In this document: positions 45,119-64,000 of the stretch, piece by piece
Position numbering within the stretch: position 1 is the first letter of the stretch
How the letters are laid out: each line of letters opens with the position of its first letter
Assembly (NCBI GenBank): GCA_021613535.1
Contig: CP075492.1
Span: forward strand, 496,001-560,000
DNA: 64,000 bases
Direction: 5' to 3'
DNA from: Adineta vaga
Taxonomy: Eukaryota; Animalia; Rotifera
Program-made: the position numbers and the translations under genes
Notes under the pieces: model-generated
The model's input: only the letters and a program-made list of their open reading frames with translations
The model's database searches: none
Told to the model about the DNA's origin: nothing

Positions 45119-46686
45119 GTCTATAGTGAATAACAAACAAGATTGCTAAACGTCAACCTTGGAATCAACAAACCAATTTTAATGATAAAACTACACCGTA
45201 TTGCGGTATTGTCAACCTTTTTATATGCAGTTGTTTTCTGATGCAATGAATCAAAACACGTGTATTCGGATGTACTTGTTTTTGGTTGAGTAATAACAAT
45301 ATGATATGAAAAAAAACCGTATGTAAATATTTATTGACACTCGATTATTCATACAGAGGATTTTATCAGGTATTTCGAATAGAAAATATCAGCCATTTGT
45401 TAGCTATCTGTTGTATAGCATACTATTTGATCCTATTGATTCACACTTTTGTTAACCAAAGTTTGGTATAATAATTTATATACTACAGATTCACTGACTC
45501 TCTGTAAAAAAATACCATTTGTCAAGAAAGTCTTGGTACGAAATAGGTTTTGAAGTGTTGATGTCAATCAATCATCAATACTTATTGTGACAATCTCTCT
45601 GACATACGCTGTACGCGTGATACAGTTTTTCTCATCTAATGGATTATCCTTATCTATGTACATTCTGATGTACTTTGATAGAATATTTTCCTGCGTTCTC
45701 TTCTGTAGGGACGAGTATATAAACGCGTGTCTTGTATCAGAACGATGCGATTTACGAGGAAGAAATAAACAAAGGCGTAGTTCCATCAGCGCATACATCT
45801 CTTCCATCAAAAATCGTCACACTTATAAAGTATTTTTTCATATATAATACGAAGGATTGTACTACAACAAACTATGAAGAGCACGTGATATGTGGTCTAT
45901 AGGGTCAACAACAGTTTTTCGCATACCGGATAATTGTTGATGAATGTCATTAGATACTTCACAGTACATTCAGATGAGGATGAAAGAAGAGAGTGCTTCC
46001 GTCACAGTATTCATATTCCGGAGTTAACTCGAATTATAGCGTGGATGGAATATTCCTCTGTCAGCCATATTCACATCTTTAAAATATATGAGAACCAATG
46101 TAAATGTTCTGCCGCTATTTCAATCGTATTCGCTTCACAAAATCTTCTTCTTCTTTTGACAATTATCATACTGATTTTTAGAAAAGAAAAGTGAAATTAA
46201 GTCTCAGAACCTTTGAATAGAAAATGACGTTGATCTGCAATTTTTATCCTTCAATAAAAGAACTGTTAGGACAAGCAGATAGTTCAAAATGTCCTCTTCA
46301 CATTAGTATCGAACGAATCTTGTCTATACGCTTACCGAAAATGTTAAATGAGACGTTTTCGGTGCTTGCTTACAAGATTCGATGACTTATTCGCTTTTGT
46401 CCGGCAGCTGAGATCTTCGACCTGGGTTTTGTTTATAACAATGACCAAGGATATTATTATTTATTGTTGAAAGATGCGAATCATAATATAACGAAATTTT
46501 CGTCCAGAAACATAATCTTATTCTTCAACAATCATCGCATTGATAAGAAAGAAATGCAAACTGAGGGTGTTTGTGACGTCAAATGTGGTGAAAGAACATG
46601 ATGTCATAATGCAACTAAATGATGTTCTCGTACTAGAAATAAACTATAAATATACTCAAAGATTAGTTGAGATCGAACATCGAACA

Positions 46687-47774
46687 ATGATATTCGAAAT
46701 TCTACCTGTTGAAATAATTCGAGAAATCTTTGAATATCTCAATGGTTTCGACATTTATCAATCTTTCTATGGATTGAACAAACGTTTAACATCAATCGCT
46801 CTCTCAACTATGGAATTACATATCGATCTGCGCGAAGTTACGTCAAACGAATGCATTCAAGTAAGTCAATCATCAAAGTATTTCATCTATCGTTAAAGAT
46901 GATCACATCTAAGTAGATGATAAACTTGGTGAATCCATCACACATCATTTCTCTCAAATTGACAAATAAATGGGATAGAAATCAAATTGAGTCAATCATT
47001 CGCATTTATCCAATCAGAATGTTCACCCAAATTCGATCGTTAACATTTGATCTGCTAAGTATAACTAATCTCGAAGAAATCGTAGATATTTTACCTTTAT
47101 TAACTTCTCTCGAATCTTTGACAATCACTTCGAACGAAAATCCATCATCGAACATTTATTCGAAATTATTCTATCGTCTCCGTCATATTAAACGACTTCG
47201 TTTCATTGCTCTCAAGGGAAAATTGGTTTGTTGGGGTAATATCGATATTCGTCAATGGCAACTCGACGCATCTTACAATTTTCGACATTTACAAATCAAT
47301 CCATTGAATTTTTCTCACTTTAGCCTTTTATTTCCTTATCTTCCATATCTTCGATCGATTGAGACGAGTCTCTGTTTTGGTAATGCACCAATTCCGCATT
47401 TGCCAAATGTGCGTTCGTGTATTCTCTATTTCGGTTTTTACGGATTTCCTGAACTAACTGATTTCCTTCAACAATGTCCCAATTTAAAAATACTCAAACT
47501 CGAAACGACAGGAATCGACGTCGTGGATGGTCATCAATGGGAAAATATCCTCACGCGTGTATTGCATCGTCTTCAACGTTTCAATCTTCTCGTGGAATTT
47601 ATGGGAGATCATGATGTTGAAAGTTGTAGAGCTTCTTTTCAAACATAATTTCGGATTCAACGTGCTACACAAGTGAATTTAGTTGAAAGTCATATGCACA
47701 TCGCACCAGATGACATTCGTACAGTTTATCAAATGACAATCGATTTCGATTATCTAAATCAACATCAATCTTAA
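46687..47774 (+). CDS. F-box/LRR protein, possibly with a premature stop at 47646
   Basis: FEILPVEIIREIFEYL...SFYGLNKRL; intron 46861-46916; the frame stays open for ~40 codons after the TAA. Confidence 0.8.
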
Positions 47775-47955
47775 AACTAAAATAGCTTCCGTGTTTTTTC
47801 TTTAATAAACTCTCTATTTTCTGCCGTTCATTTGATCACTTTATGAAAGAACATCGACTGTGTGAGATTTCCTGCTTAGCCTGAAAGACAAGTATCGTGA
47901 GTATGCGAACAGAAAGATAACATCCTCACCTACGTTTAATACTTATTGAATCACA

Positions 47956-48420
47956 TTATAAGACAGTCCGACTCGTTTGAACTGCCTTCTCGAAATACTC
48001 TACTGCGTTGGAATATTCACTCAGTCTTGCAAATGTTAAGCCTATCTTAAAGTAAGTCTTGGCTAGACTGGGATGAGTCGATGGCACAGTTTGTTTCTGT
48101 ATTTCAAGTGTCTGGTTGTAGTTTTCAAGAGCTTTTGAGTGTTCACCTATGTTAAAATACACATCTGCGATATTATTGTAGCTCGTTACGATATTCGGAT
48201 GAGTTAGTGGCAGAACTTTACGCCAGATTTCAAGTGCATTTTTGTAGTTTTCAAGAGCTCTCAGATATTCGCGCATTCGAGAATACATTGAACCGATGTT
48301 ATTGTAACAGGTGGCTATACTCAGATGAGTCGATGGAAGAGTTTTCTGTAGAATATACAGTGCTCGATTATAGTTTTCGAGAGCTCTAGTGTACTCACCC
48401 ATATCATAATATACCAAACC
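47956..48420 (-). pseudogene. TPR-repeat gene, 3' remnant
   Basis: 42-aa ATCYNNIG..Y..M.EY..AL repeats; cut mid-repeat at the telomeric tract. Confidence 0.85.
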
Positions 48421-48443
48421 TTGAGGGTGTGGGTGTGGGTGTG
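48421..48443 (+). repeat. Telomeric-repeat tract at the retroelement 3' junction
   Basis: TTGAGGG TGTGGG TGTGGG TGTG. Confidence 0.9.
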
Positions 48444-48454
48444 TAAACAGCCGC

Positions 48455-48496
48455 CATGACCGGTTTCATCTCCAGCTAAGAAGATTCTTCAGATGA
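48455..48496 (-). ncRNA. Minimal type I hammerhead ribozyme
   Basis: Minus strand ucau-CUGAAGA-aucuuc(uuagcu)ggagau-GAAA-CCG-GUC^aug; 6-bp stem II and the palindromic GAAACCGGUC stem III typical of PLE hammerheads. Confidence 0.88.
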
Positions 48497-48519
48497 TATG
48501 AGTTTGTTTATTATTCGAT

Positions 48520-49451
48520 AATCACAAGAATAGGCTACATCTAATGATACCGCATAATTTATGAAAATTTATAAAGTTAACATAGTGGTGTACACTTGAA
48601 AGTATTACTAATGAGAAGAAGGTTTCGTTGTTTTGTTGTAATGAGGATTCAAGTGAGGAAATCGTACAAGTTTCGGAAGGAGAAAGGTGAACGTTTCTCG
48701 GTGGAAAATTCATTAAGTGGATTTCTGTGGTATTGATTTGCAATTAATATCAACATGGTATATTTATTGGAATGGGTTGCGGTGCTGTGACGTTGGTTGG
48801 CATTTTCTGAGATGATTGTATTACATTCGTCTGATTATATAGAGACGGGTATATGTGTTACGGAAACTTTCACCTTGTACATTTGTTTAGGTATGCCAAT
48901 TTTTGATCTGATTTTGGGTGGTTTTTGAATTAGATCTATATTTCGAAGTTATTCACCAACTACATAATCACCGTTTACACAATGTAGTTTTTGTTTGAAA
49001 AATTTCATAAACTTGCTTTTATTAACGCAATCAATTAAAAATATTACGGGAATTTGATTATTTGGATTGATGATGATCCAATATTTGTTCCATAAAGTTT
49101 ATTATTATAACAATGACCAGTATCTAGAATGATCATACTATCATGAGCAAAATAGATTAAATAATTTTTTTATTCAGTGTTGATAAATAATACCAGACTT
49201 ATAAAGAAATTATTATTACTATTATTAAGAGTGTACTCAGCCGATGTTTGTTCTGAATCGCTATTATATGATTCGATGATATCATCCATATTTTCACTCA
49301 TCATTGTAATGAAAAAGAAATAGCATCGATCTGAACAATTAATAAAGTCGCTTTTTATTTCTAATTTGTCAGCTAATTCACCAAGTAATTCTCTTCCCTT
49401 AAAGATTACTTTTAATAGTTGATTCCATCCTGGTTTTTGATAAAATGCCAT
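48520..49451 (-). pseudogene. Terminon cargo ORF E, spliced or decayed, unknown function
   Basis: 93-aa ORF plus downstream broken frames, co-oriented with RT. Confidence 0.4.
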
Positions 49452-49974
49452 ATGTTAATAATGTATAGATAGAAAGATAAATATTTTTGAAATATCTGAA
49501 ACAGAAAAGTTTCATATTAGTAAATTATTAGAATGGTACTTGCTACAACTAAACACTATGAATTTTATGCAATTACAAAAAAAAAACAAAAGAGAAATCG
49601 AACAACGTCATTTAAATGTTTAATTGGATGATGTTAGTAGAGGCTTTGTGTATATTGTATTCGAATTATCTTGAAGGCCGCGACACGGTAATTGATCAAA
49701 ATGACATGGAAGATAATCGTAATCATATGATTTGATGATCTATGATTGTGATAAAGTAATTTTAAGTAAGAAGAAAAAACGAAAACATTTTGATTTGACT
49801 TACTTTTTCTTTCCATCTATTTTCTTGCTCGTTGAGCATGCTTATTTCATCCGAATACTGCGAGATACAATCAATGTAGTGCATAAATCTGGGATCATTT
49901 GCTATGGGTATATCTGTGTATACATCTATATAGGTATGTATGCATATAGTTTCATTCATTCTTTGGTATAGGCA

Positions 49975-50403
49975 TCAAAACCGAGAAACAAATTGAAGAA
50001 ACTTACTATGCAATAATGATGTTGGTGAAAAAGACTTGGTTTTGTTTGAGAGAAGTCTGCGTACGATAAAGGTAAGTAAGAGTAAAAGCATGAAAACCAA
50101 TATTAGACTAATGATAATAGTTTGTCGATATTGTTGTGCCAGATCTGTAAAATAGTTATTTGATAAAGAATGTGTAAACAATTGAGTTCGATTAAACATC
50201 GAAGTAGTTGTGTTTGCAAGAGGGCAACCTTCAGCGAATGGAGCTACCGTACAATTCACTCGAAGTGGTTTGATTTTCATTCGATGTAGATATAATTGCG
50301 CTAGATGTTCGTCCATATCGTTGTTAAATATATCAGAATAGTTGAGTGGTCGATGAAATCCATAGGAATGACTGCTGTTGCGAAATATATAGTAATTAGT
50401 CAT
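49975..50403 (-). CDS. Terminon cargo ORF D, small single-TM protein
   Basis: IIISLILVFMLLLLLTFIVRR TM segment; several N-x-S/T sites upstream. Confidence 0.65.
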   Translation of the reverse strand: MTNYYIFRNSSHSYGFHRPLNYSDIFNNDMDEHLAQLYLHRMKIKPLRVNCTVAPFAEGCPLANTTTSMFNRTQLFTHSLSNNYFTDLAQQYRQTIIISLILVFMLLLLLTFIVRRLLSNKTKSFSPTSLLHSKFLQFVSRF

Positions 50404-50986
50404 GTTGTTTTCAAAACAATAAAAGTAAAAGATTAGACCAAAAAATCTGAAGAAAAAACGAAAACAAAATTCAGGATAAAGTTGATCGATAAAGATAAGT
50501 CAAAAATAAACTGATCTTTAGGATTCGAGTCTGTCTTGGGTATCATAATTAGTTTTATTTCAGCTACGACGATTTGCGGATGATATTAATTGCTACATGC
50601 AAGTGATATAAAATTTGAAAAAAAAACTACTTGAGCGAAAATCTATTTTAAAATTATTAAAACTTTTGAGTATTAGCGAAGATTTATTCGAAAACTTTTC
50701 GTGGTGTTTTTTATCAGTTACATATAGTTTTCGTGTTTTGACAAAGTTTGTTTAAAATGATTTATAAATTGAACTGGATTAGAATAAGGTGAATATTGTT
50801 TCAGAACATTGATAAACTGATATGATATTGATTGGATTAATCTTGGGTGAGTGAATATTTATGAGAAATATGAGATTAGAAATGAATTATACGATGGAGT
50901 AAACCGTATGTCTAGTGTCGATTTGATTAATTAGTCAAGATTATTAGATGTTCCCATTACTGCAACTGTATAAATTGTTCCGTATT

Positions 50987-51715
50987 TCATTGATGCTCTT
51001 CTTCTTCTTTTTGGTGTATGGCATGTGTCATATTAATTTGGTCCATTTGTTCGATTTCGTTTTCTAATATTTCTGTATGTTGTGGAATAGTGATTCCACG
51101 ATGTTCGTTCAATTGATCTTGTTCCAAATCGTCACGTCGAAATTGTTCTTGTTTTTGTTGTTCGTTTTCGAACGTTTGAGTTTGATTTATTTGCTCAATT
51201 TCGTCCTGTATCATTGGTAATTGTTCTTGAGCAGCAGATGCTTCGAGCTCATTTATTTGTTTTTGTTTATATTCATCTCCTGCATCGTCATTCTTCTTTG
51301 CTTGTAAATGTGTTCTGTAAGTCATTCGATCTGTTCGATCGACGAATAACTGGTGATATTGAATGCTACCATTGTGTTGCGGTGATCGATCTCTATTTGG
51401 ACATTGGTGTTCAATAGATCGTTCATGTCTTTGTCTACTGGTATACTGCATTTGAAGCCATCGCTGTTCTTGTCGAGAGTGATATGGTCTACCTCGTCGT
51501 GCGTGTCGTGGCCTGAGTGTACTATCGTATCGTTGAGGAGCTTGAATTGTTGATAGTCGACTCGAAATTCTATCAGTTGTTGTAGGTTGTGTGAATGGTC
51601 GGTTTACAGTTCCATTCTCAACAGATATCAGTAGATCAATATTGGATTGGTTTTCATTCTTTGAAATTAATGGTTCTGATGGAGTACATCCGAGCTGACT
51701 GTTATTTGTATCCAT
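50987..51715 (-). CDS. Terminon cargo ORF C, Arg-rich then Q/E-rich coiled coil
   Basis: Starts MDTNNSQLG; RPRHARRGRP; acidic helical C-terminus. Confidence 0.7.
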   Translation of the reverse strand: MDTNNSQLGCTPSEPLISKNENQSNIDLLISVENGTVNRPFTQPTTTDRISSRLSTIQAPQRYDSTLRPRHARRGRPYHSRQEQRWLQMQYTSRQRHERSIEHQCPNRDRSPQHNGSIQYHQLFVDRTDRMTYRTHLQAKKNDDAGDEYKQKQINELEASAAQEQLPMIQDEIEQINQTQTFENEQQKQEQFRRDDLEQDQLNEHRGITIPQHTEILENEIEQMDQINMTHAIHQKEEEEHQ

Positions 51716-52374
51716 ATTCTAAAATAAACGTTTGAACATAAGAAAGAACAACTTCGACCTTTACATGCTTTTTTTAAATATTGAAGCGGAGTTTATGTTA
51801 AAGAATATGATATCTTTTTCAGACGAAACTGAATTAAATCGTATATATCTATAACATATAACAGAAGCTAAATACATTAAGGATATAAACAGTTACCAGA
51901 ATGATGGTTCTATTTATTTTTTGGAATAATAATTAATGGTCTACGATTTACGTCGAACAGTTGAAAATTGAAATAAAAATATAAGTGATTCGTATGTTGA
52001 GAGTTGCTTAGATGTAGATATAATATTGAGGTAAAGTAATTCAATATCCTTTGTAGAAAATTAAATGGAATCGTACATGTATCTAGAATATAAAATGTAA
52101 ATTAAACAATTTTAAATGGTGAATATGGAGTGAATTTGAAGAATATTAATAAACATTAAGAGAACACTTTACTCTATTCAAATGGTTTCAGTTTATAGAG
52201 AATAGAATTGAAACGGTGATCACAATAGGAATGTTGAATTATAGATATCGAAGATGAAATATATAGTTGTAAAAGAAGTCTATATAGAACGATGATAATT
52301 GCAAGATAAAAGTTGGGTTTAAAAGTAGCTTGGATTGTATTGAATTATTGAAATAAAAATGTGATATCTTCTCA

Positions 52375-52914
52375 TTACTCTAGTGTTGATCTTCCCTTAT
52401 CACATTGTTGCACTTCATTTTGTTCTTTCTCCTCTTTTCATCTTTCAGCGGCATCAATTTCATCAAGTTGTTGGACTTCCTCTTGCATTCCTGCAAGTTC
52501 ATTGATTTATTCTTGTTCCCAACGGTCCATTGTTGTTTGTAGTTGCCGTTGCCGATTTTGTTCGCGTCCTAGTTGCCGTTGATATTAATCTTCATACCAT
52601 TGCTCATATTGTTCTTGTCTTCTTTGTGCACTTCGACGTTAACAATAGCTTCGTCGATGTAGTTGTTGGTAGTATCGGTGTTGTAAACTTCGTGGTCCTT
52701 CTTGTCTTCGGGTTAGGGAATTCTGTCCGGAGGTGTTCGTAATTGCTGGTAGTTGACCTGTAGCCATATTTACAGGATTAAATATAACTGATAATGATTG
52801 ACTTGTAGTTATCATTTCATTAGCGAAGAATTGATTGAAGGTGGATTCGTTTCCATTATTTTCAAATGATGCTTCGTTTGGATCATGACCAATTTGACTG
52901 TTGGTTGTATTCAT
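52375..52914 (-). pseudogene. Terminon cargo ORF B, paralog of ORF C with in-frame stops
   Basis: Starts MNTTNSQIGHDPNE; the frame continues past stops through ...WEQE*INELAGMQEEVQQ (compare QKQINELEA in ORF C). Confidence 0.65.
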
Positions 52915-53752
52915 TCCGAAATGGGTGTTCAGGAATAATAGTAATAATAAACATTCCCATGAATTACATAATTAATAATTTTTAGATATTGAAGAGGAAA
53001 TGCTCACATGAAAAGGTTGAATATTTGTCTTGTATCCTGTTCTGAAGTAAACGCAGGTGTAGATATGTCTAGAAAAAGTAAAATAATTGAGAGGTATTTG
53101 TGTTCTAATTGGATATTAATTGAAAAGTATTAATTAACCTAATTTTTCTATTAGGATGTGAATGTAAATTTGTTTACTCACTGCTTAGATGTTGAAATCA
53201 AATTATTTTTTAGTTTTCTGGTAAATGAGTTAGATTAAGATTGTTTACATATCGTTAACTACGTATTTGTTTGAATTGCTTGTAATTCGTACTGTTTCGT
53301 TGTTGAATTTCAAATAAAAAGTTACCGATGTTTTCATTGATCTGAAATAGGTGAAAGTTTTAGCTAGCTGTGACGACAGAGAGTAATGATCGCAAATTTA
53401 ACATCTATTTGAGTTTATTTACAGGTGTATTCATATATTACATAGTTCGATTAAGTGTTTAGTGATTAATGTACAAAAAAGATTTACAGTTATATAAAGT
53501 CATCATACAGTTTAAGTATGAAAAAGGGTTTGTTTCTTCTAAGATTCAGGTGCTATATTGATATATAAATGAAAATGCTTATATAGGATCGGGTAAAAAG
53601 GTAATGACTGTGCCAGCTAATGATATTTGATTGTAGGTCAATGAAGATTGATCACCATTTTGAATTTCAGTATGGTTTCGATAAATATCACTTTCGCTTG
53701 GTATTTTCGGATATTGTGAATATGTTGAACGGTCTAGAAGAAAAAAAGATTT

Positions 53753-54346
53753 TCAAATGCACATGTTTTGCCAAGAAAAATAAGGAGTTTTCGCTGAACA
53801 CGTACCATGTGTAGTAACGCGATAATTATAAGTACGAAAGTAAGTTCGATAAAAAGCATTAACATGACAAATTATTGTTCGAACGATAAGCAGCAAAACA
53901 CAGACGAATGTGAAATAGAGTACGTATTTCCATAGATGTGATTCTTGTAGTCGTATGAAAGAAACCAACGAATCAAAATATCTCTTCATTGAATGGTTAG
54001 TTGAATAATAATAATCATTCTTTGTTATATTTTGTGGAAGATTCGAATTTGAATCATTCTTATTAACAATGATCGATGGAAAAGTTGCATTAGTTTTGAT
54101 TAGATTAATAGCCGATGTATTGCTATGATTATTTGTCAGATTTGTTACTACGGATGAAGATAGATATTGTTTTTCACGTTGCAATAAAAATTCTGGTATT
54201 GTAAAATTGTACGGATTAATATTATATCTTCTAGGTTTAGTTGGTCGACGTTTATATGCCCTAGTTAGTACGGGAGGAGTTGATGAAGATGACATTTCGT
54301 TGAACAACTTGAGATATCTAGAATAGAGTGATTCAAATTCTTGCAT
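53753..54346 (-). CDS. Terminon cargo ORF A, single-TM protein
   Basis: YVLYFTFVCVLLLIVR TM segment preceded by an N/S/T-rich region with many N-x-S/T sites. Confidence 0.65.
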   Translation of the reverse strand: MQEFESLYSRYLKLFNEMSSSSTPPVLTRAYKRRPTKPRRYNINPYNFTIPEFLLQREKQYLSSSVVTNLTNNHSNTSAINLIKTNATFPSIIVNKNDSNSNLPQNITKNDYYYSTNHSMKRYFDSLVSFIRLQESHLWKYVLYFTFVCVLLLIVRTIICHVNAFYRTYFRTYNYRVTTHGTCSAKTPYFSWQNMCI

Positions 54347-54699
54347 ATAGTTGTTGTTTTGTTTTTTCGATGTTGCAAAATAATTGGATTTTTAAGTAGA
54401 GTAATCTAGAAAGACAAACATTATTATCATACATAAATAACTTACAGACGATTTTTGGAAAAAAAAAGATAAACATAATCATATAGTTGTTTCATTACTA
54501 TCAAGTCAAAAGTCTAAATATACATTTATAATAAATTATGTGCATATAGAGTATATTTTGAAAATGAAAAATAGGTTTTAGCAGGAAGTAAAGGAAACAA
54601 AGGGTATAGCTGTAGATAGTGTTGATTATTTTGTGAATAAAGTCGATTGTTGTGAAAGAGTGTGTCATAAAATATAACGAATGATGATATATTTTACAA

Positions 54700-57600
54700 T
54701 TATGTTTGAGCTGGATGATTGTGAGTCTTGTTTGTACTTGTACGTGATGATTGATCTAGTCGCCGTAGTCTCTCTGAATGATAGACAATTAATAATTAAT
54801 CTATAGAGTATGAAATATATAATAAATTTTGATATGACTTACTTTGACGTGGTTGATTTCGCAGTAAGACTCGTTTTGGACGCTTACGTATTAGTTCATG
54901 ATTGGCATTACGACGAATCTTATTGCCTACAATCATTTTGACATTTTGATTTGTTGATTGACTGAATATATCTTTATGAACGTCATGGAGACCTCGTTTC
55001 ATTCCTCGTAGACGATGTTCATATGTGTAATGAATGAATAATTTACTTTCATCTTTTTTCTCTTTCTTATTTGGTTCATTTGTTGATGATATTTGTGTAT
55101 GTTGTCCTACGTTAGCAGTATGATCGATGATATCATCGTCCCTTGACGGAATAATTTCAATTACTTCTGTTTCGCGATTTTGTAGTTCGAGGAATAGATT
55201 ATTACGCATAACAAAGAATTGATTTTCGCTAACTATAAAAGGTAATAATGAGGATGACGAAATATGCTCTTGGAAAAAATTTCGAAATACACTTTCAATG
55301 AATTTTGAAGGATAGCTAAACAAATAAATCAGCATTGTTTGTATGAATGACTAGTAGACAAAGCTTACCCGTTATATAATAACATTAATTTAATATAGCG
55401 TCGTTCTTGATTGAATAGTTCAAATGTCGACGAATATTTTAATGCGTATGCAAGACGATTCTGTATAATATTAATAAAAACATGTCGTGGATGATCAGAA
55501 ATAAATGGGACAACGTAAGGTTCAGCTGCTGGTTTATGATACACACATGTTGATAGAATACCATTATTATTTGTTAGAAGAATATCAAGAAATGGAAGAC
55601 TTTGACTGATTTTATAATCCAACTTTATGTTTGGGTGCCATGTATTAGCTTCATTTAATAGTTTAATTAGATTTTGTTCTGATCTATTCCATGTGATAAA
55701 TATATCATCAATATATCTGTAGAATGAGATTATCACAAACAAATATTATTACCAACTCTTCCAATTTTTCTACTTACCGACCATAAAATTCACCAGTCAT
55801 ATCTTGTTGACGAACAAATTCTTTTTCCCATTTCCACATAAATATATTCGCTAAAGTTAATGTAAATGATGAGCCCATTGCACCCCCAAGCGTTTGTCGA
55901 TAAGTTTTATTTCCGTAGACAAAAACATTTTCTTTGATAACAATAGAAGCTAGTTGTCTGATTGTATCAAGCGAAATTCGTTCGACATGTCTATATTCAT
56001 GTATTTGAAGAAATTCAATGAGAATATCAATGAGAATATCAAGTGCTTCGTCTTGTGGTAACATCGTATATAAATTATGAATATCAGATGTACAAAAAAG
56101 AGTTGAGGATTTTAAAAGACATTTAGTTGTATAATTGAATATTCTCTGAAGAAACGAAGTACCGTCAATAAGATTTGTTTCTTTACGTTCTTCATTAAAT
56201 ATAGGTCGTATAATACTATCCAAAAATTTTGATATATTTGTTGTTGGAGCAGTTATAGTATTTTCAATTGGTCTCACAGGTATATTATCCTAAATCATAT
56301 CGCATATAAAATATACTAGTTTACGTTGAAATGAATAAAGAAGGCATTTCTTTTACCTTGTGTGTTTTAGGATTAAAATATAAATGAGCTAATTCACATT
56401 TTGTACGATCAAACATCATTCTATTGTATTGTTCTTTGGAAATCAGTTTTTCTTGACGTAATCGATTGAGTAATGTAGTAATCTTATTTTGAATTTCATT
56501 GAATGGATTATCAGATAATTCTATGAAAGCTTTTGTATCTTGAAAGAATTTATCCACTTTGTTCTCGAATTCAATGGCTGAGCCAATATAAAAATTATGA
56601 CCTTTATCAGTTTGACGAATAATAAGGTTGTTTTGTTTAATTTTTTGTCGAATACTTGCAGCAATATGTTTTTGCTGTAGAGCTTGAATATGATCTTTAT
56701 AGGATGTTGGTGAAAAGTAACAACGATTGAGATACGTATGAAGTTGATGTGAATACAGTTTGAAATAGGGAGATTCGGATGCTATACGATGTGGATAGGA
56801 GATAAGATGTTTTTTAACTGTTTGAGAAATTTCTTTATATTCGGTTTCGATGACAACTTTTTGTTGATCTTTTGGACGAAGTGCAGTTTGATTCATTCTA
56901 ATAAAAGATGGACCTTCACAGCAATAGACAAAAAAAGAAAAGAAAAGAAAAGAAAAAGAAGATATTTATTTAATTACTTGTTCGGTATCATATCACTTAC
57001 CTTGCGAAAGTTGATTTCACTGACATTTATTGAATGGATTCGAATGTAGATCAAGATATGGTTCAGGAGAAACACCTACTGTCGTTTTTGCCAATGATGA
57101 ACGTTGTCGATTTTGTAATAATCTTCGCCGAAAAGATGATATTTTATCATATATCTCTCGTTGTAAACGACTTGTACGATAGTTCATATATTCTTTAACT
57201 CTATTGATTATCGAATTAGAAGAACAATCGTCCATAGTAGCAACGGTAGTAGTACTAGTACTAGTACTAGTAGAAGAAGTCGTATTAGTTGTTGCTTTTG
57301 TGACTGTATTATCTAATAACTGTAATCTTTCTTCGAATTCTAGAAATTCATTTTGATATTGTTGATCATATTCTTGTAATTTAATTTCGTAAGCATGAAG
57401 TAAAATATTTAGACACAGCCGTTTTCCATCTTGTATAAACTTATGATGAATATTGTTAAATTGAATTGACTTTTGTTGATAAAGGAAGGGTGTATACAAT
57501 ACAGGTGCAATAAAACGTTCTAATTGAATGAAATCTAATGATAAAAGTTTACATAAAATTCGTGTTTCAAACATTAGAAGTTGTTCGCAACATTTCATTG

Positions 57601-58838
57601 ATTGTTGGCGTATACTTGTTAGTCGTTGGAAAGATTCATTCTCAAATAAAGATTACATGTTTATAGTCATTCATGATCAAATATCTAGAGACAAAAAACA
57701 GACGGAGAGAAAGAAGAGATGCAACTTACTTGATCATTTGTCAAATGAAATGTGCATATCGATTGAAATAGCTCATTTTCAGTATTAAACTCTTTGAATT
57801 CCAATATTTGTCTATTATTTTGCATTGATATATATTTTCGTTGACAATCAACAAGTTATTTAAGGCAATGATCAATTTGATCACTTGTTAAGTTTGTCAT
57901 TGGACACGACTGCATTTGTCTGTTCAATTCAATTTCAAAAATATTTAATTGACTACTAATTGTTCCGATATAATTAAGCAAATATTGCTGACATAATTCG
58001 AAATCATTTGTCTTTGCCATCATCTGAAGTTGATTCTTTTGTTTATGAAAGAGATAGAGGGAATGAAAGAATATAGTTCATTTCTCAAGAAATAAACTTA
58101 CTGGCCATATATGCTTCTGTTGGCCAATTTCGAAATAGGATTGCCATAATTGTCGGTGAATTTCTAAACAATAATGTTCATCTAATAGACTTATTCGTGT
58201 ATAAATAAAATCTTTTTCAATTTTTGTTTTCAATGTATAATTTAATGTTCTATTTAACATTTGAAATAGTACTGCAGATGATCGATCCAAATACATTGGT
58301 CTTCTATAATACAGGAATGAAAAGGTATTTTATACATACTTCTATCCTGTTAAATTATATTGATAGAAACTAACCGATAGTTTATATGTAGGTTAGTATT
58401 ATCAATAATGGTTTTCTTCTTTTTCAATGATGGTTGTACAATAGATACTGAAGCTGTGGATTTAGGTATCATTGTTGAATTTGTTTTTAGTTCTGGCAAT
58501 GAAATATCTCGTTTACGTTTGTTTAAATTTGATAGTGGTATCGGTTTTGTTGTTGTTGTTGTTAACACCACTACTTGTGCATTTCTTTCAGTTACCAATT
58601 CTCGATTCGATAATACTGTTTGTAGATTCTTCTCATTAGTACTTGAATTTTTCTTCTTGACAAGATTTCGTTTCTGAAGTAACTTCTCTATTTTACCTGG
58701 TTTGATATTTTGTGCACGACATTTTCTTCGAAAACGTTGATTACGTCGATTGCCATGACATTTTTTTCTTTGCTGTTGCTGTTCCTCTTGTATTTCTTTG
58801 ACGTCTTGATAGTTCAGTGAACTATTATTTGTGTCCAT
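54700..58838 (-). pseudogene. Spliced coiled-coil + Athena/PLE reverse transcriptase gene with a few lesions
   Basis: KKCHGNRRNQRFRRKCR; RQTDKG, LYFNPKTHK, RPI, DIHNLYT, QTLGGAMGS..LANIFM, YGR/YIDDIF, LPFLD, VYHKP; several GT-AG introns; in-frame stops near 57860 and 57018; 12-bp duplication (ILIDILIE). Confidence 0.92.
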
Positions 58839-58951
58839 GGTAGGTTACAAACGAATATAAATAATTATAGTTTATTGCAGTTAAATGAATGAAATATATA
58901 TAATTATAAATCTGAAACGAATGAAAAAGAAACATTTATTGAATTATACTA

Positions 58952-61385
58952 TAGTCCTTTGGTCTCAAATTCAGACTGAAATTTTGATTTTTTTCACTTT
59001 TGACATTTTTTGATCTTTTCTATTTTTCATATGCAATAAAAGATATTTATTATATATTATGACTATTGTCGTATATAGGCGGTGACGCGCTACAATTAAC
59101 GCTATTTTAAAAAGCGACTGCTCCTAACATATATAAATAGTGACACATTTTATGCATAAGTGACACTTATAATGTTTTGATTTTTTTATATCACTGTTAC
59201 GTGTTTTTGATCTTTTTCTTGATTGAATATTTACTTATACACAGTAGCTATCATTTGTCAATAGCGATTTAATTCATTGTTGTTAATTGCTTAATTATAA
59301 TAAAAATGGACATTGACCTCGACAATCATGGTGATGATTCTGATCATGGTGGTGACTCTCGTCGTGGTGGCTTTCGTCCTGGTGCTGGCCGTAAAAGAAA
59401 AACATTATCATCATCAATTCAGATGATGGCAAATGAAAGAAAACAACGAGCTGCACGTCGACAAGAAATATCGAGATATAAAGCTCAATTAAGAGAATGG
59501 ATAAATGATATAAAATGGTCACATCAAGGTGTTCCATCAACTTTTCATGATAATGCAACTGCTTTATTACTTATATTTAATCTCATGTTAGAAAATGTTG
59601 ATTTAACACAAACAGAAGCTGTTACTAAAGCTGCTCTGTATTTGGGTCGTGGTCCTTCTGCATTACGTGCATTGGTTGCACATTGGAATAAATATGAAGA
59701 GATATATGTTGAACCAGGTACAAGAGGTGGTTCATTAGGACAACAATCAACGAAATTATTTATATCTTTACCTCATTTCATTATAACTACTATTATGGAT
59801 CGTTATGCTGAAGGTAAAACTACTTCAGTTAAAGATATACAACAAGCTATCGTTGATATACATGATAAACATATAAGTTATTGGCCAATATATTATATCA
59901 TGCATGATAAAATGAAATTATCATATGGCTTGCTAAAAGGTTCAATGAAGTTAACACAAGATGCTAATTGAATCAAACGTATTGGTCAATTTCTAGTCAA
60001 ATACAGCTCTGCTCTCAATTTGGAGAAGAATAAAGAAGCAGTAGTCTGTTATATGGATGAATCATATGTGAATACAGGTCACCATGTTCATTATGGATGG
60101 TACACAGACAGTACAAACAGAAATATTCTTAGTGGTACTGGAGCTGGTAAAAGACTTATAATAGTGCATGCTATTACTAGTGATGGTCTTCTCTACAACG
60201 TTGATTCATTAACAAATAAAATTATTTCTGCTGAATTGCTTTATGAAGCTAAAAATCCTTTCGGTGATTATCATTGTAACATGAATGGTCACAATTTTCG
60301 TTTATGGGTGAACCAATATTTATTTCCTGCATTTGAAGCTAAATATGGTTGTGATAAGAGAATGATTCTCGTATTGGATAATGCTCCGTATCATAAAGAA
60401 CAAGGTGAAGGTTATGTCAATCTAAAATCAATGTCAAAGATGGATATGATTGATATTCTTCTTTCCAAAAAAGTACGCAATGTAGTAGTCATTCGAAATG
60501 GACAACCAAAAACGTTCAACCAGAATGAATGGAAAATGAATGGTCCATCAGGTCCTTATAAAAAAGAATTACAAGTATTTATGGAAAGTTGGATCAAACA
60601 ATATCCTGATCTTCAGAAAACGTTATTGGAGAAATTATTCGAACATAAATCATTAGCTGCAAAAACCGGTGTACCTGACTTTCATTATTTGATATTTACT
60701 CCACCATATAGTCCTCAACTTCAACCTATCGAATTAGTGTGGGCTTATGTTAAAGGTTATGTTGCTAAACAATTTACATCTTCTAGAACTGTTCAACAAT
60801 TAATTGAACAAACGAAGAAAGGGTTCTACGGTGATGGAGGTGATCATGAAGCAATATCAGCAGAAATGGTCAGAAAAATGATTGTACATGCTCATAAATA
60901 TTGTGATATGCTTATTAACGACAATCCTCTGTTAAAAGGATCTATAAATAACATAAAGAATGTAAAAGATTACGAAGAAGTCGACGAAAAAGAAGAAGAT
61001 GAAGATGAGGATGATGATATCAATATAGAAGCCGATGATATTATTGAATAACTTTCATTAAAAAGTATTATCGTGCACAGCACTTCTGGACTTGATGGTT
61101 AGAATGCTTGATCGACATTAAAAATGTTATTTTTCTGTATAAATCAGTTGTCATTTATATAAAATTAAAATTGAAAAATTTATGTCACACTTTTTTTCTA
61201 ACATATTTTCTTTTAATCTTTTTATAACTACTGTTCAATCATCTGTTACTAGTATCACACCATTATATAGCTTATAGTGTCCTCTAGCAAACATTCAAGT
61301 ACGGTAATAAAAATAATGGAAAATAGTTTCAGGAGAAGTAATCAAACAAACTCACCATTAATCTGAATTTGAGACCAAAGGACTA
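58952..61385 (+). mobile_element. IS630/Tc1-superfamily (Sailor-like) DNA transposon
   Basis: TIR TAGTCCTTTGGTCTCAAATTCAGA and its inverse; TA duplication; reconstructed empty site ACTAGT. Confidence 0.92.
59306..61051 (+). pseudogene. DD117E transposase with one in-frame TGA (59969-59971)
   Basis: The two ORFs are in the same frame; RGGFRPGAGRK AT-hook-like motif; YMDESY, GKRLIIVHAI, DYHCNMN, LDNAPYH, PPYSPQLQPIELVW. Confidence 0.9.
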
Positions 61386-63137
61386 TAGTTTTTTTTCCTT
61401 CGCTTGGTATAGAAATACGTTGTATTACGATTTTGTAGAGAATTTGACGGAGAATCTTTCTATAAAACATATTTTTTACTATGTTGAATTATAAATGAAA
61501 AGTGCGCAAAATACTGAGGGGCTCATTATTTCTGACTCATCCAGTACAATCATCAACTAATGTTCGCTTTGTTCAAAACTTGGCTGTAGTTGGTTTCCTA
61601 CCAGCCAATAGAATCTCAAGATTGATATGCCTCGATTTTGAACTTAATCTTTCCTCAAAAACCGTGTAATCATTTCTAAACTGACTATCCGTCGAAAAAA
61701 GATTGCTTCTTTAAAACTACGTACGGATGTCACAGAACAAAACTGGAAATATTTCATGCTATTCTATCTTTATTAAGATGGAGGTAAATGCATAATAATA
61801 GACGGCATGGATGGAGTAAAAATTTTTCTTCTGTTCTGTTATAAATATCGGAAGAAACAGAACGTGTCTTTTTTTGTTGGAAAGATATGCGTATATTTTT
61901 CTTATCATATACTTAATATGTTGAATTGCAGCTGAAAAGTTGATAGATTTAGCACATCCATATACTCATAAACAACGGATTGTTATTTTCCAATGCCATT
62001 GCATAATGAAGCTAACAACATAAAATATTTTTCAACAACAAGTAACGTTCGGCGTTTCGACTCACTCGGCTCTCGACTGTGAGAAAGACATAAGTATTTT
62101 TTTGCATCTACTCATGCTCGAAGACTTGGTCTAGCAGCTGTATCGAAATAAGCAATATAAATCTTTTTATTTAAATTGAATCGTTCAAAAATAGTGTTTG
62201 GTCTTTTTTGTGAAATAATTTGAGACAAAAAAAGATTTTTTTATTAAAAGCTTATAATATAATTATAAGTACATATAAAGTTTTACAGACGAGAGATAGA
62301 ACGTAATTGTGTTTCTTTATATAATTTATCTAGTCTTTCTATTTCAGCGAGTTGAGATTAGCTTTTTTTTCCCGTTAATAACACTTTGCAGTCGAAATGT
62401 CTTCAAATAGCTATATCATTGAAACGTTGCTAAGTAACAGCGGTACATAAATTGCGGCAATATCATCAGTTCGATTTCGTCGTTTTAACCCAAACAGTAA
62501 TCGATCGATCCCTTATACTCCATCGGATCCCACAGAAATTCATCGGAAGCAGTCGGAATCTAACAACTTTCGATGAAAGTTGATCATTTTTCCCACTGTA
62601 GATCCGATGGTCGGATTGTTCGTCATGGAATAGTAATAGATGACTATACACACTGTAGACACACACCGTTTGAAATATAACTCAATCACATCCATACCCC
62701 TACTCATGATTTCACATAACTCCCAGGTGTATATTCCCATTCACACTCTCATCCATATCCACACTCCTCACAAGACATTAGTGTTTTACTATTTATCATT
62801 ATCGTCAATTTTAACACAAATTTTATTTGTATGACTTTGATATTATTCATCGATTTTATAATAAAACTGTGATTACTCTAAAAAGAAGACATTTAACTTT
62901 AGCAAATTAAGCTCTCAACACAAAAAGAATTACATGTATACTTTATAGACAATGTGCACACTCAGGAACCGAACTTAGCATGGTGTATAGTTATGTACCT
63001 TTTGATCTTGAATACTCCATTGAATTCTATAATTCCATCTTTTTATTGTTTTAAGTTTTATAGTTTTAGATAATGATATCATAAATATGGAAAACATCTT
63101 AACAACAACTTCTAACCAGCTTTAGACAAGCAAAGAT

Positions 63138-63509
63138 ATGTCATACAAACACGTCACTATTGTCTGGCTAGGAAAGGATTCAAATAATGAGCCAGAAAAA
63201 TCAATAATTAGTAGAATCAAAGAACAAGTGCAAGAATTGGAAGTGTTTGATGATGCAGATGTGTGTATCGATTATCTCTCATCATTAGAAAATGAAACAG
63301 TGCTTATGATTACATCACACATATTCAGTGAAACAATCATACCACTGATTTCTGAAATACCATCAATTGCTGTAATCTATTTATACTGCGAAATCTGTTT
63401 AGTCTATGAAAATGTGAATAATGAAAGTTCTAACAAAGTGGCTGGTATTTTCGATAATGAAGACCAACTATTATCAGCTGTTCGTTGTTATACAAACGAT
63501 AATGAGTAA
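63138..63509 (+). CDS. Stand-alone N-terminal (receiver-like) domain of the ART-TPR family
   Basis: IVWL...CIDYL...E.V.MI.S...I..IYLYC...KV.GIF; same pattern as aa ~265-380 of the 25948 ORF. Confidence 0.65.
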   Translation: MSYKHVTIVWLGKDSNNEPEKSIISRIKEQVQELEVFDDADVCIDYLSSLENETVLMITSHIFSETIIPLISEIPSIAVIYLYCEICLVYENVNNESSNKVAGIFDNEDQLLSAVRCYTNDNE

Positions 63510-64000
63510 GTTCACTATGACTGTGTGAAAAGACTTTCTATTGTAACATCACACATTCACTATTACGTACGGTTTTATTCGCGATGTCTCTGGTAGAGTT
63601 TGGAGTTCTGGATAGTCTTCCATATTTTTCTAACTTTTAGACAGTTCTAAAAATATATGAATCCTCGTCGTCGAAATCCAGATCGCCGATATGCATTTCG
63701 AGGATACGACTTTCGATTGACTAATCATTGATGACATATATTTTCGATTATTTACTTTTTAACAGAACAAACGATTGATACACATCTTTAATAACGTACT
63801 TTCTCTATATCTGTTTATATATTCATGTGTGGATACAAATGAGAGCAAGCATACTGATAGCTAAAAAGAACGGTTAATGAAAAGGGTATTCAATGTGTCT
63901 ATAATTAAAAAAAGTTTGATGATATTCATTTCGACAATCTGTGATTTCGACGCAGTTTTCGACCATAACAATTTTCTATCAGGGTTATAATCCATCCTCA

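What the first reader, a model, noticed from the sequence alone, without database searches (positions are those of the whole stretch)
48421..58949. Giant Athena/Terminon retroelement attached through telomeric repeats to a broken gene, now chromosome-internal
Seen: a TPR gene is cut mid-repeat at 48420. It is followed by TTGAGGG(TGTGGG)2TGTG, a hammerhead about 12 bp later, five cargo ORFs and a spliced CC-RT gene, all on the minus strand, with no GIY-YIG domain. Known: bdelloid Athena/Terminon elements lack an endonuclease, end in a hammerhead plus reverse-complement telomeric repeats and prime on G-rich 3' ends; the polarity here fits. Inference: a break in the TPR gene exposed or acquired telomeric repeats and was extended by the retroelement. 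The end was later rejoined to ordinary DNA, since a host gene follows at 63 kb.
Basis: partly seen in the sequence, partly recalled or inferred. Interest (0 to 1): 0.8.

Follow-up and report, generated by a model that had tools for sequence, protein, structure and literature searches.

The report
Fossil Athena retroelement joint in rotifer subtelomere
This is a 10.5 kb copy of a known telomere-attaching jumping gene of bdelloid rotifers, joined by its ribozyme-and-telomere-repeat tail to a broken host gene; it is a real scar of an old DNA break, but one of dozens like it in this genome.

Summary
A TPR_12 gene remnant on the minus strand (47956-48420) is cut inside a repeat. It abuts (C)TTGAGGG(TGTGGG)2TGTG at 48421-48443. 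A minimal hammerhead follows at 48446-48500, then 10.5 kb of an endonuclease-less Penelope-like element on the minus strand.

- **Element content:** four small ORFs that are intact in sister copies, and a spliced RT gene with the DKG motif. No GIY-YIG domain was found.
- **Junction support:** contigs from three independent DNA studies bridge the TPR/repeat/hammerhead joint.
- **Hammerhead support:** a covariance model built only from other families' hammerheads finds this site alone in the 64 kb window (E 4e-8). Rfam finds nothing.

- The end at 58949 is not the element's own 5' end. It is the edge of a 2.44 kb Tc1/mariner-type transposon, and sister copies continue at least 1.3 kb further.
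- "ORF 5" (58350-58838) is probably exon 1 of the RT gene.
- The copy points the wrong way for a terminal addition at the nearest chromosome end (0.54 Mb away), as do 13 of 33 such ends. Later rearrangement is therefore needed, or it was never a stable end.

This kind of element and scar is already published for the likely host, Adineta vaga. The scan noted similar ends elsewhere in this genome (s1-494380, s1-508363). Interest is low to moderate.

The parts
47956..48420 (-). Remnant (C-terminal 153-154 codons and stop) of a TPR_12-repeat host gene, cut inside a repeat. The breakpoint is ambiguous by 1-2 nt, because the C at 48420 may belong to the CTTGAGGG motif.
   Evidence: Pfam TPR_12 E 5e-46. 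Sequence. The flank 46400-48420 is single-copy in the genome.
48421..48443 (+). Short G-strand telomeric tract TTGAGGG(TGTGGG)2TGTG. On the element's sense strand this is its tail (ACACCC)3TCAA.
   Evidence: The same arrangement with other flanks occurs at sister copies and other families.
48446..48500 (-). Minimal type-I hammerhead motif with a palindromic two-pair helix III (ACCGGU). Predicted cleavage is after the C at 48458.
   Evidence: CM R1 from other families: single window hit, 35.7 bits, E 4e-8. Covariation in A2. Hand parse. Rfam is negative.
48421..58948 (-). Athena/Terminon-type endonuclease-less Penelope-like retroelement copy, 10.5 kb, incomplete at its 5' side.
   Evidence: 92-99% identical to C1:342324-352753. 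Further copies lie on C5, C3 and C4, all subtelomeric.
49975..50403 (-). Accessory ORF, 142 aa, with a hydrophobic C-terminal segment. No Pfam family.
   Evidence: Intact in four sister copies at 92-99% aa identity.
50987..51715 (-). Accessory ORF, 242 aa, Q/E/R-rich. No Pfam family. It contains a 79-bp stretch (51225-51303) that the C1 and C5 copies lack.
52639..52914 (-). Short conserved ORF (91 aa), possibly the first exon of a longer gene. Its N-terminus (MNTTNSQ) resembles those of ORFs 50987 and 58350.
53753..54346 (-). Accessory ORF, 197 aa, with a hydrophobic segment. No Pfam family.
   Evidence: 98% identical and intact in the C1 copy.
54796..58838 (-). Multi-exon gene for the N-terminally extended PLE reverse transcriptase. 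Pieces: 58838-58350, 57598-57017, 56896-56357 (DKG motif), 56289-55778, 55716-55369 (YIDD) and 55315-54796. It ends without an endonuclease domain.
   Evidence: GT..AG introns. The pieces are collinear with single Adineta/Rotaria proteins that end 1-30 aa after the last piece. phmmer top hits. RVT_1 is only weak, E 0.043.
58949..61389 (+). Tc1/mariner-type DNA transposon (DDE_3) with 28-bp terminal inverted repeats. It bounds the retroelement.
   Evidence: Pfam DDE_3 E 4e-16. Three other copies at about 99% identity, and the inverted repeats.
61390..64000 (.). DNA unrelated to the element. It is a paralogue (80-83%) of C1:16286310-16289225 and includes ORF 63138-63509. An ART-family gene follows 5 kb further on.

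Best explanation
Window 48421-58948 (minus strand) is a 5'-incomplete copy of a recently active Athena/Terminon-type Penelope-like retroelement that lacks an endonuclease.

**How such elements attach (established knowledge).** Their RNA ends in a hammerhead fold followed by reverse-complement telomeric repeats. That tail pairs with, or is copied onto, a free G-rich or broken 3' end. The element's own RT then extends that end.

**What is shown here.** The end that was extended lay inside a TPR-repeat gene. The strand carrying the gene remnant continues as CTTGAGGG(TGTGGG)2TGTG and then as the antisense copy of the element.

**What is inferred.**
- A double-strand break in the TPR gene was capped in this way, forming a neotelomere.
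- The part of the gene on the other side of the break was lost.
- Later the capped end became internal. A mariner-type transposon entered the element's 5' region, and a rearrangement at that transposon joined it to unrelated subtelomeric DNA.
- The whole block now lies 0.54 Mb from the end of chromosome 3, inverted relative to that end.

It is a scar, not a working system.
For: **Junction and tail.**
- Sequence of the joint.
- Independent sister copies end at the same hammerhead plus tail but have different flanks.
- The genome-wide pattern 'hammerhead core ... ACACCCACACCC' gives 40 hits against 2 in the control. These are 23 distinct ends, all within about 4 Mb of chromosome ends. Most are joined to unique DNA through tracts of only 12-44 nt.

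**Hammerhead.**
- Covariation in the alignment of other families' hammerheads.
- Model R1 hits only 48446-48500 in the window, E 4e-8.

**Reverse transcriptase.**
- DKG and YIDD motifs and three GT..AG introns.
- The best 150 and 120 relatives that were looked up are all from bdelloid rotifers, and none carries GIY-YIG.
- The relatives' proteins stop right after the last exon.
- A genome-wide six-frame GIY-YIG search gives only four places, all on another chromosome.

**Junction in reads.** One contig in each of three DNA runs from three studies covers 46200-48466/48475 with at most 1 difference.

**5' side.**
- Homology to the C1 and C5 copies stops exactly at the transposon edge.
- Those copies continue for 1.3 kb that is absent from the window.

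**Literature.**
- Terminon/Athena properties (PMC6431247, PMC8557442).
- Dynamic subtelomeres in the AV20 assembly (PMC8494291).
- Telomeric repeats and Athena fragments at deletion breakpoints, with neotelomeres 'formed and removed ... leaving only scars' (PMC13564844).
Against: - No intact allele or orthologue of the TPR gene was found, so the break itself is inferred from a truncated repeat array. The assembly is haploid, and the nearest paralogues are about 70% identical.
- The 5' end carries no telomeric cap, which is the usual mark of a copy that once formed a chromosome end.
- The orientation is opposite to that expected for the nearest chromosome end.
- The tract is only 23 nt and starts with CTTGAGGG. 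That template-like start is found about 1,500 times genome-wide, including far from chromosome ends. The joint therefore may never have been a stable telomere.
- The transposon junctions at 58949 and 61389 were not checked against reads.
- No formal RT phylogeny with endonuclease-bearing PLEs was made.
Confidence: 0.8

Rival explanations
1. The joint never was a chromosome end. An internal double-strand break in the TPR gene was repaired by reverse transcription primed on one broken end (endonuclease-independent insertion). The cDNA's far end was joined to the other side or to other DNA by end joining, with loss of the rest of the gene.
For: - The tract is very short and begins with the template-defined CTTGAGGG. 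That start marks about 1,500 short telomere-like tracts along whole chromosomes, against about 21 in the control.
- 13 of 33 hammerhead-tailed ends, this one included, are inverted relative to the nearest chromosome end.
- There is no telomeric cap at the 5' side.
Against: - The other half of the TPR gene is not found within 19 kb beyond the element.
- The 5' boundary coincides with a transposon edge rather than a clean joint to host DNA.
- All copies cluster in the outer few Mb of chromosomes. That fits terminal addition followed by subtelomeric shuffling.
Confidence: 0.15
2. It is an ordinary intrachromosomal insertion of an endonuclease-bearing Penelope-like element into the TPR gene.
For: The RT is PLE-like (DKG motif), and hammerheads also occur in endonuclease-bearing PLEs (PMC6431247).
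Against: - No GIY-YIG in any ORF, in relatives, or in a six-frame genome search of this chromosome.
- No second half of the gene and no target-site duplication.
- A telomeric tail follows directly after the hammerhead.
Confidence: 0.02
3. It is an assembly artefact: a chimeric join of a TPR locus to a repeated element.
For: The element is multi-copy, and the right-hand junctions at 58949 and 61389 were not checked with reads.
Against: Contigs from runs of 2013, 2015 and 2021, from three studies, each cross 48420/48421 by 46-55 nt with at most 1 mismatch. That stretch includes a copy-specific base in the hammerhead region.
Confidence: 0.03

Closest known systems
Athena / Terminon elements of Adineta vaga (Gladyshev & Arkhipova 2007; Arkhipova et al. 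2017; reviewed in PMC6431247 and PMC8557442)
   Same: - An endonuclease-less PLE RT with the DKG motif and introns.
- A 3' hammerhead directly followed by (ACACCC)n with a TCACCC-type variant.
- Attachment to G-strand repeats.
- Small accessory ORFs with hydrophobic or charged, low-complexity stretches.
- Subtelomeric clustering, with host gene fragments between elements.
   Different: - This copy is only 10.5 kb and carries none of the enzymatic cargo listed for giant Terminons (DEDDy, GDSL, Rep, stand-alone GIY-YIG).
- Its 5' side is bounded by a DNA transposon instead of a telomeric cap.
- It is inverted relative to the nearest chromosome end.
- The primary papers were not available to me, so I could not check whether this family is one of the named ones.
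Neotelomere scars at breakpoints in A. vaga lines (PMC13564844, 2026)
   Same: Telomeric repeats and Athena sequence sit exactly at a breakpoint that removes part of the chromosome. That paper proposes that such caps form and are later removed or internalised, leaving scars.
   Different: Those are fresh events in experimental lines. This one is fixed in the reference assembly, present in data sets from 2013 to 2021, and old enough to have acquired a transposon and a rearrangement.
Endonuclease-independent LINE-1 insertion at DNA breaks, and HeT-A/TART additions at Drosophila chromosome ends
   Same: A retroelement RT uses a free chromosomal 3' end as primer, without its own nuclease.
   Different: - The RT clade is different (non-LTR elements against PLE/TERT-related).
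- Those elements have no hammerhead and no telomere-repeat tail.
- Drosophila has no telomerase repeats.
Type I hammerhead ribozymes of Penelope-like elements (Cervera & De la Pena 2014, cited in PMC6431247)
   Same: The conserved core CUGANGA...GAAA...H, and a very short palindromic helix III of the kind thought to act as a dimer.
   Different: - It is not recognised by any Rfam model, even at E 10.
- Helix I has only four pairs here, one of them a wobble.
- Cleavage was not tested.

Membership tests
Athena/Terminon (endonuclease-deficient Penelope-like elements) | PLE-type RT with the N-terminal DKG motif and the core motifs | tested here: met
   - IRQTDKGHNFYIG lies in exon 56896-56357, and YIDD and FLD in exon 55716-55369.
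- phmmer of exon 55774-56277 gives 2561 hits.
- The pieces are collinear with those proteins.
Athena/Terminon (endonuclease-deficient Penelope-like elements) | RT branches in the Athena clade in a tree with endonuclease-bearing PLEs and TERT | not tested
   No endonuclease-bearing reference RTs could be obtained. There is only a proxy: none of 28 long relatives and none of 120 word-search relatives has PF01541.
Athena/Terminon (endonuclease-deficient Penelope-like elements) | No GIY-YIG endonuclease fused to the RT | tested here: met
   - Pfam on all ORFs at E up to 10 for the RT exons.
- The six-frame PF01541 search of the genome gives four places, all on C2.
- Relatives' proteins end 1-30 aa after the last RT exon.
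Athena/Terminon (endonuclease-deficient Penelope-like elements) | Hammerhead motif at the 3' end | tested here: met
   CM R1, trained without this family, gives 35.7 bits and E 4e-8 at 48446-48500, the only hit in 64 kb. Covariation supports the fold.
Athena/Terminon (endonuclease-deficient Penelope-like elements) | [quoted passage not shown] | tested here: met
   (ACACCC)3TCAA lies on the sense strand at 48443-48421, 3 nt after the motif. The same is seen in 23 distinct ends genome-wide.
Athena/Terminon (endonuclease-deficient Penelope-like elements) | Introns in the RT gene | tested here: met
   Three GT..AG introns of 53-67 nt keep the frame. The exon joints are contiguous in relatives' proteins.
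Athena/Terminon (endonuclease-deficient Penelope-like elements) | 5' truncation capped by telomeric repeats | tested here: not met
   No repeats lie at 58900-59000 or 61390-61450. The boundary is a mariner-type transposon.
Terminon in the strict sense (giant composite unit up to 40 kb with enzymatic cargo) | Large size and accessory enzymatic ORFs (DEDDy, GDSL, Rep, stand-alone GIY-YIG) | tested here: not met
   10.5 kb is present. Sister copies add 1.3 kb with two further ORFs. The four accessory ORFs have no Pfam family.
Endonuclease-bearing Penelope/Poseidon/Neptune/Nematis elements | C-terminal GIY-YIG endonuclease and insertion with both target flanks present | tested here: not met
   No GIY-YIG. 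No TPR remainder beyond the element.
Rfam hammerhead families (RF00163 and relatives) | Score over the family's gathering threshold | tested here: not met
   No hammerhead match at E up to 1 over 20 kb, or up to 10 over 141 nt. The minimal helix III of the PLE type is probably outside those models.

The most novel reading that the evidence does not exclude
The joint starts with CTTGAGGG. This template-defined start also begins about 1,500 short telomere-like tracts and 'hairpin' units spread along whole chromosomes, and it ends 6-7 of the 23 hammerhead-tailed elements.

Suppose that start is the copied 3' terminus of an Athena-type RNA, or the first register of telomerase on a bare end. Then this scar is one instance of a general repair route in bdelloids, in which an RT seals non-telomeric double-strand breaks anywhere in the genome and the cap is later built over.

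The second joint seen only in the older read sets (46312 joined to 48421) would then be a sign that such caps are re-made at nearby positions within laboratory time.
Probability: 0.2. Interest if true: 0.6.

Novelty: already known. Interest (0 to 1): 0.25.

Why it matters
It gives a clean, read-supported example of a broken gene capped by a telomere-attaching retroelement and later buried inside a chromosome arm. Such scars date and map past chromosome breaks in an animal known for surviving genome shattering.

The example adds two details:
- A DNA transposon sits at the rejoining point.
- The scar is inverted relative to the chromosome end.

It does not reveal a new kind of element or mechanism. 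The one wider lead is the CTTGAGGG start shared with about 1,500 sites genome-wide, which deserves its own study.

Tried and rejected
- **Rfam:** searched over 20 kb at E up to 1 and over 141 nt at E up to 10. No hammerhead was found, so I built my own model.
- **Pfam on RT pieces:** only RVT_1 at E 0.043.
- **Primary papers:** the Terminon and Athena papers (10.1093/molbev/msx159, PMC5850863, PMC1890498) are not held.
- **Allelic or homoeologous copy of the TPR flank:** none in the haploid assembly, only paralogous TPR arrays at about 70% identity.
- **Rest of the TPR gene beyond the element:** none in window 58949-64000 or C3:558001-578000.
- **Reciprocal product of a mariner-mediated exchange:** the three other transposon copies have unrelated flanks. 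A target-site duplication for the transposon could not be defined.
- **RNA evidence:** the one putative RNA run laid showed only 18-19 nt chance-size matches. This says nothing about expression.
- **Fetching the GIY-YIG-bearing loci on C2 for an RT outgroup:** No formal tree was made.
- **First search for the 46312|48421 joined form:** one search used a pattern that was off by two bases. The corrected pattern also finds nothing in the assembly.
- **Literature search for TGAGGG/TGTGGG in rotifers:** nothing relevant.
- **Joined RT model:** the spliced RT model was never joined.


Full report
**Where this is.** The window is G000:C3:496001-560000 of a 100.8 Mb assembly in six contigs. The evidence for the host is:
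- the telomeric hexamer is TGTGGG;
- the nearest proteins that carry a name are all from Adineta and Rotaria;
- a haploid six-chromosome assembly fits the AV20 assembly of Adineta vaga (PMC8494291).

I infer that host; it was not given. The finding lies 0.54 Mb from the left end of a 20.35 Mb chromosome.

**The joint.**
- On the plus strand the sequence reads ...ataccaaacc | TTGAGGG TGTGGG TGTGGG TGTG | taaacagccgccatgaccggtttcatc....
- Left of the bar is a minus-strand ORF (47956-48417) that matches TPR_12 at E 5e-46.
- Its frame stays open up to the joint. It begins within helix A of a repeat (G-L-VYYDMGEY). The full unit...NNIG-xVY..., recurs twice downstream. The array is therefore cut mid-repeat and its N-terminal part is missing.
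- The flank 46400-48420 is single-copy. Only paralogous TPR arrays at about 70% identity exist elsewhere.
- Telomeric dodecamers are far above chance in the window: 37 matches against 0.03 expected.

**The hammerhead.**
- Rfam finds nothing.
- By hand, the minus strand reads CAU-CUGAAGA-AUCUUC UUAGCU GGAGAU-GAAA-CCGG-UC | AUGG.
- That is the conserved core, a six-pair helix II, a two-pair palindromic helix III (ACCGGU) and a short helix I.

I tested this in three steps.
1. I scanned the genome for 'CTGANGA, 12-30 nt, GAAA, 14-40 nt, ACACCCACACCC'. This gave 40 matches against 2 for the reversed control.
2. The 23 distinct ends belong to several families. Helix III is always a short palindrome (ACCGGT, ACGCGT, ATCTAGAT, ACTATAGT or ATCATGAT), and helices I and II covary.
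3. I aligned 19 ends, leaving out this element's own family. In that alignment 90% of cells pair, against 19-49% when partners are slid, and 9 of 11 pairs change on both sides.

The covariance model built from that alignment finds one site in the 64 kb window, on either strand. It is 48446-48500 (minus), 35.7 bits, E 4e-8. The motif is real and of the kind described for telomere-attaching PLEs (PMC6431247).

**The element.**
- Window 48437-58951 is 92-99% identical to C1:342324-352753. There are further copies or fragments on C5, C3 and C4, all near chromosome ends.
- Each copy ends at the same hammerhead and tail but has a different flank and a different number of repeats. These are independent attachments.
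- The RT gene is on the minus strand. Its introns at 56356-56290, 55777-55717 and 55368-55316 have GT..AG ends and keep the frame.
- It has the DKG motif, YIDD and FLD.
- Pfam hardly sees it: RVT_1 at E 0.043.
- I therefore searched one exon against 1.84 billion representatives. This gave 2561 hits. Eight of the ten long hits I looked up carry a bdelloid name, and the other two carry no name.
- None of 28 long relatives has GIY-YIG. None of 120 relatives from a word search has it either.
- Six window pieces, from 58838 down to 54796, are collinear with single predicted proteins of A. ricciae, A. steineri and Rotaria. Those proteins stop 1-30 residues after the last piece. There is no room for a C-terminal endonuclease.
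- ORF 58350-58838 is best read as the first exon of the RT gene rather than as cargo.
- A six-frame genome search for PF01541 gives four places, none on this chromosome.
- Exons were searched one at a time by reference. I made no joined model and no tree, because endonuclease-bearing reference RTs could not be fetched.
- Downstream of the RT, four ORFs (49975, 50987, 52639, 53753) are intact in sister copies. ORF 49170 is not. None has a Pfam family.

**The other end.**
- Homology to the sister copies stops at 58948-58951.
- From 58949 to 61389 lies a DDE_3 transposon with 28-bp inverted repeats. It has three other copies at about 99% identity.
- In the C1 copy, and in a 79% identical C5 copy, the retroelement runs on for 1.3 kb with two more sense ORFs.
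- In the window the DNA right of the transposon is unrelated. It is a paralogue of C1:16.29 Mb, followed by ART-family genes.
- So the transposon is not a simple insertion. One of its ends marks a rearrangement or deletion.
- No telomeric cap is present there.
- No TPR-like coding sequence lies in the next 19 kb.

**Reads.**
- In three DNA runs from three studies (2013, 2015, 2021), one contig each covers 46200 to 48466/48475 with at most one difference. Each therefore crosses the joint by 46-55 nt.
- The element itself has three- to five-fold depth, as expected for a small family.
- One oddity: in the 2013 and 2015 runs, but not the 2021 run, a contig at single-copy depth joins 46312 directly to 48421.
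- That form is absent from the assembly. Its 23-nt left side is unique in the genome.
- It may be the other haplotype, or a lost variant. Subtelomeric allelic deletions and loss of heterozygosity between samples of this strain are published (PMC8494291).
- I could not resolve it.

**Context and polarity.**
- The local polarity fits the published model: G-strand repeats, then the antisense element.
- Relative to the chromosome it does not. The retained 'proximal' side faces the near chromosome end.
- Of 33 hammerhead-tailed ends, 20 point the way a terminal addition at the nearest end predicts, and 13 do not.
- They lie from 2.7 kb to about 4 Mb from chromosome ends.
- The window holds other interstitial tracts at 3.9, 7.1 and 33.5 kb, and there are more at C3:568.6-569.3 kb.
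- This copy is therefore an ordinary member of a shuffled subtelomere.

**The CTTGAGGG start.**
- The tract begins (C)TTGAGGG. The same start is seen at other junctions.
- Genome-wide, CTTGAGGGTG occurs 1,494 times against 21 in the control, including far from chromosome ends. It often heads short units of G-strand repeats, a spacer and the C-strand repeats ending CCCTCAAG.
- It is thus a template-defined start, from either telomerase or an Athena-type RNA tail.
- This weakens the idea that the joint was ever a long-lived telomere, and it keeps open repair of an internal break.

**What is known.**
- Endonuclease-less Athena/Terminon elements, their hammerhead plus (ACACCC)n/(TCACCC)n tails, their introns and the host genes caught between them are described for this species (PMC6431247, PMC8557442).
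- A 2026 paper reports telomeric repeats and Athena fragments at deletion breakpoints. It proposes neotelomeres that form and are removed, leaving scars (PMC13564844).
- The scan itself noted similar ends elsewhere in this genome.

**Verdict.** The kind is already known, and interest is low to moderate.

Noticed in passing
G000 genome-wide; window 48420-48429 and 4083-4092: The 10-mer CTTGAGGGTG occurs 745+749 times in the genome against 13+8 for the reversed control, along whole chromosomes. Many sites head short units of G-strand repeats, a 10-20 nt spacer, and C-strand repeats ending CCCTCAAG.
   Followed up: partly
window 3899-4092 and 7126-7280: Two head-to-head telomeric-repeat 'hairpin' units share the spacer TTGAGAGAAGAGTTTTAAC. 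The first abuts the start of a fungal-type MACPF ORF (1764-3989, minus).
   Followed up: partly
window 46312 | 48421 (read contigs only): In the runs of 2013 and 2015, but not 2021, a contig at single-copy depth joins 46312 directly to the start of the tract at 48421. It skips 2,108 bases that hold the LRR-like ORF and the TPR remnant. The form is absent from the assembly.
   Followed up: partly
window 58949-61389; also C5:1139359, C3:651690, C6:13762115: A 2.44 kb DDE_3 (Tc1/mariner-type) transposon is present in four copies at about 99% identity, so it was recently mobile. Its two ORFs (221 and 343 aa) may be one split transposase. Its target-site duplication could not be defined.
   Followed up: partly
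L036:900-1300 (C3:568,900-569,300): A cluster of several very short tracts, each restarting with (C)TTGAGGG and separated by 10-11 nt of other sequence. It lies next to two hammerhead-tailed ends and another hairpin unit.
   Followed up: no
G000:C1:5474248-5588145: At least eleven sites with the identical 80-nt string starting CTTGAGGGTGTATAC, most spaced about 10.36 kb apart. This is a large tandem array of unknown content.
   Followed up: no
window 50987-51715, 52639-52914, 58350-58838: Three ORFs of the element start with nearly the same residues (MDTNNSQ / MNTTNSQ / MDTNNSS). This suggests duplicated 5' modules.
   Followed up: no
L025:3013-4325 (C1:341012-342324): Sister copies carry 1.3 kb more 5' sequence with two sense ORFs (243 and 146 aa, no clear Pfam family). 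This stretch is shared at 81% with the C5:898 kb copy. A 7tm_1 ORF lies just upstream in C1 only.
   Followed up: partly
window 5544-6605: A second, unrelated Mos1-type mariner transposase ORF (HTH_48 and Transposase_1) lies between the two hairpin units.
   Followed up: no
window 48437-49620 against the rest of the element: The 3'-most 1.2 kb is only 92% identical to the C1 copy, while the rest is 97-99% identical. Two alternative hammerhead/tail modules (ACCGGT type and ATCTAGAT type) are found on otherwise similar copies. This suggests recombination between families.
   Followed up: no
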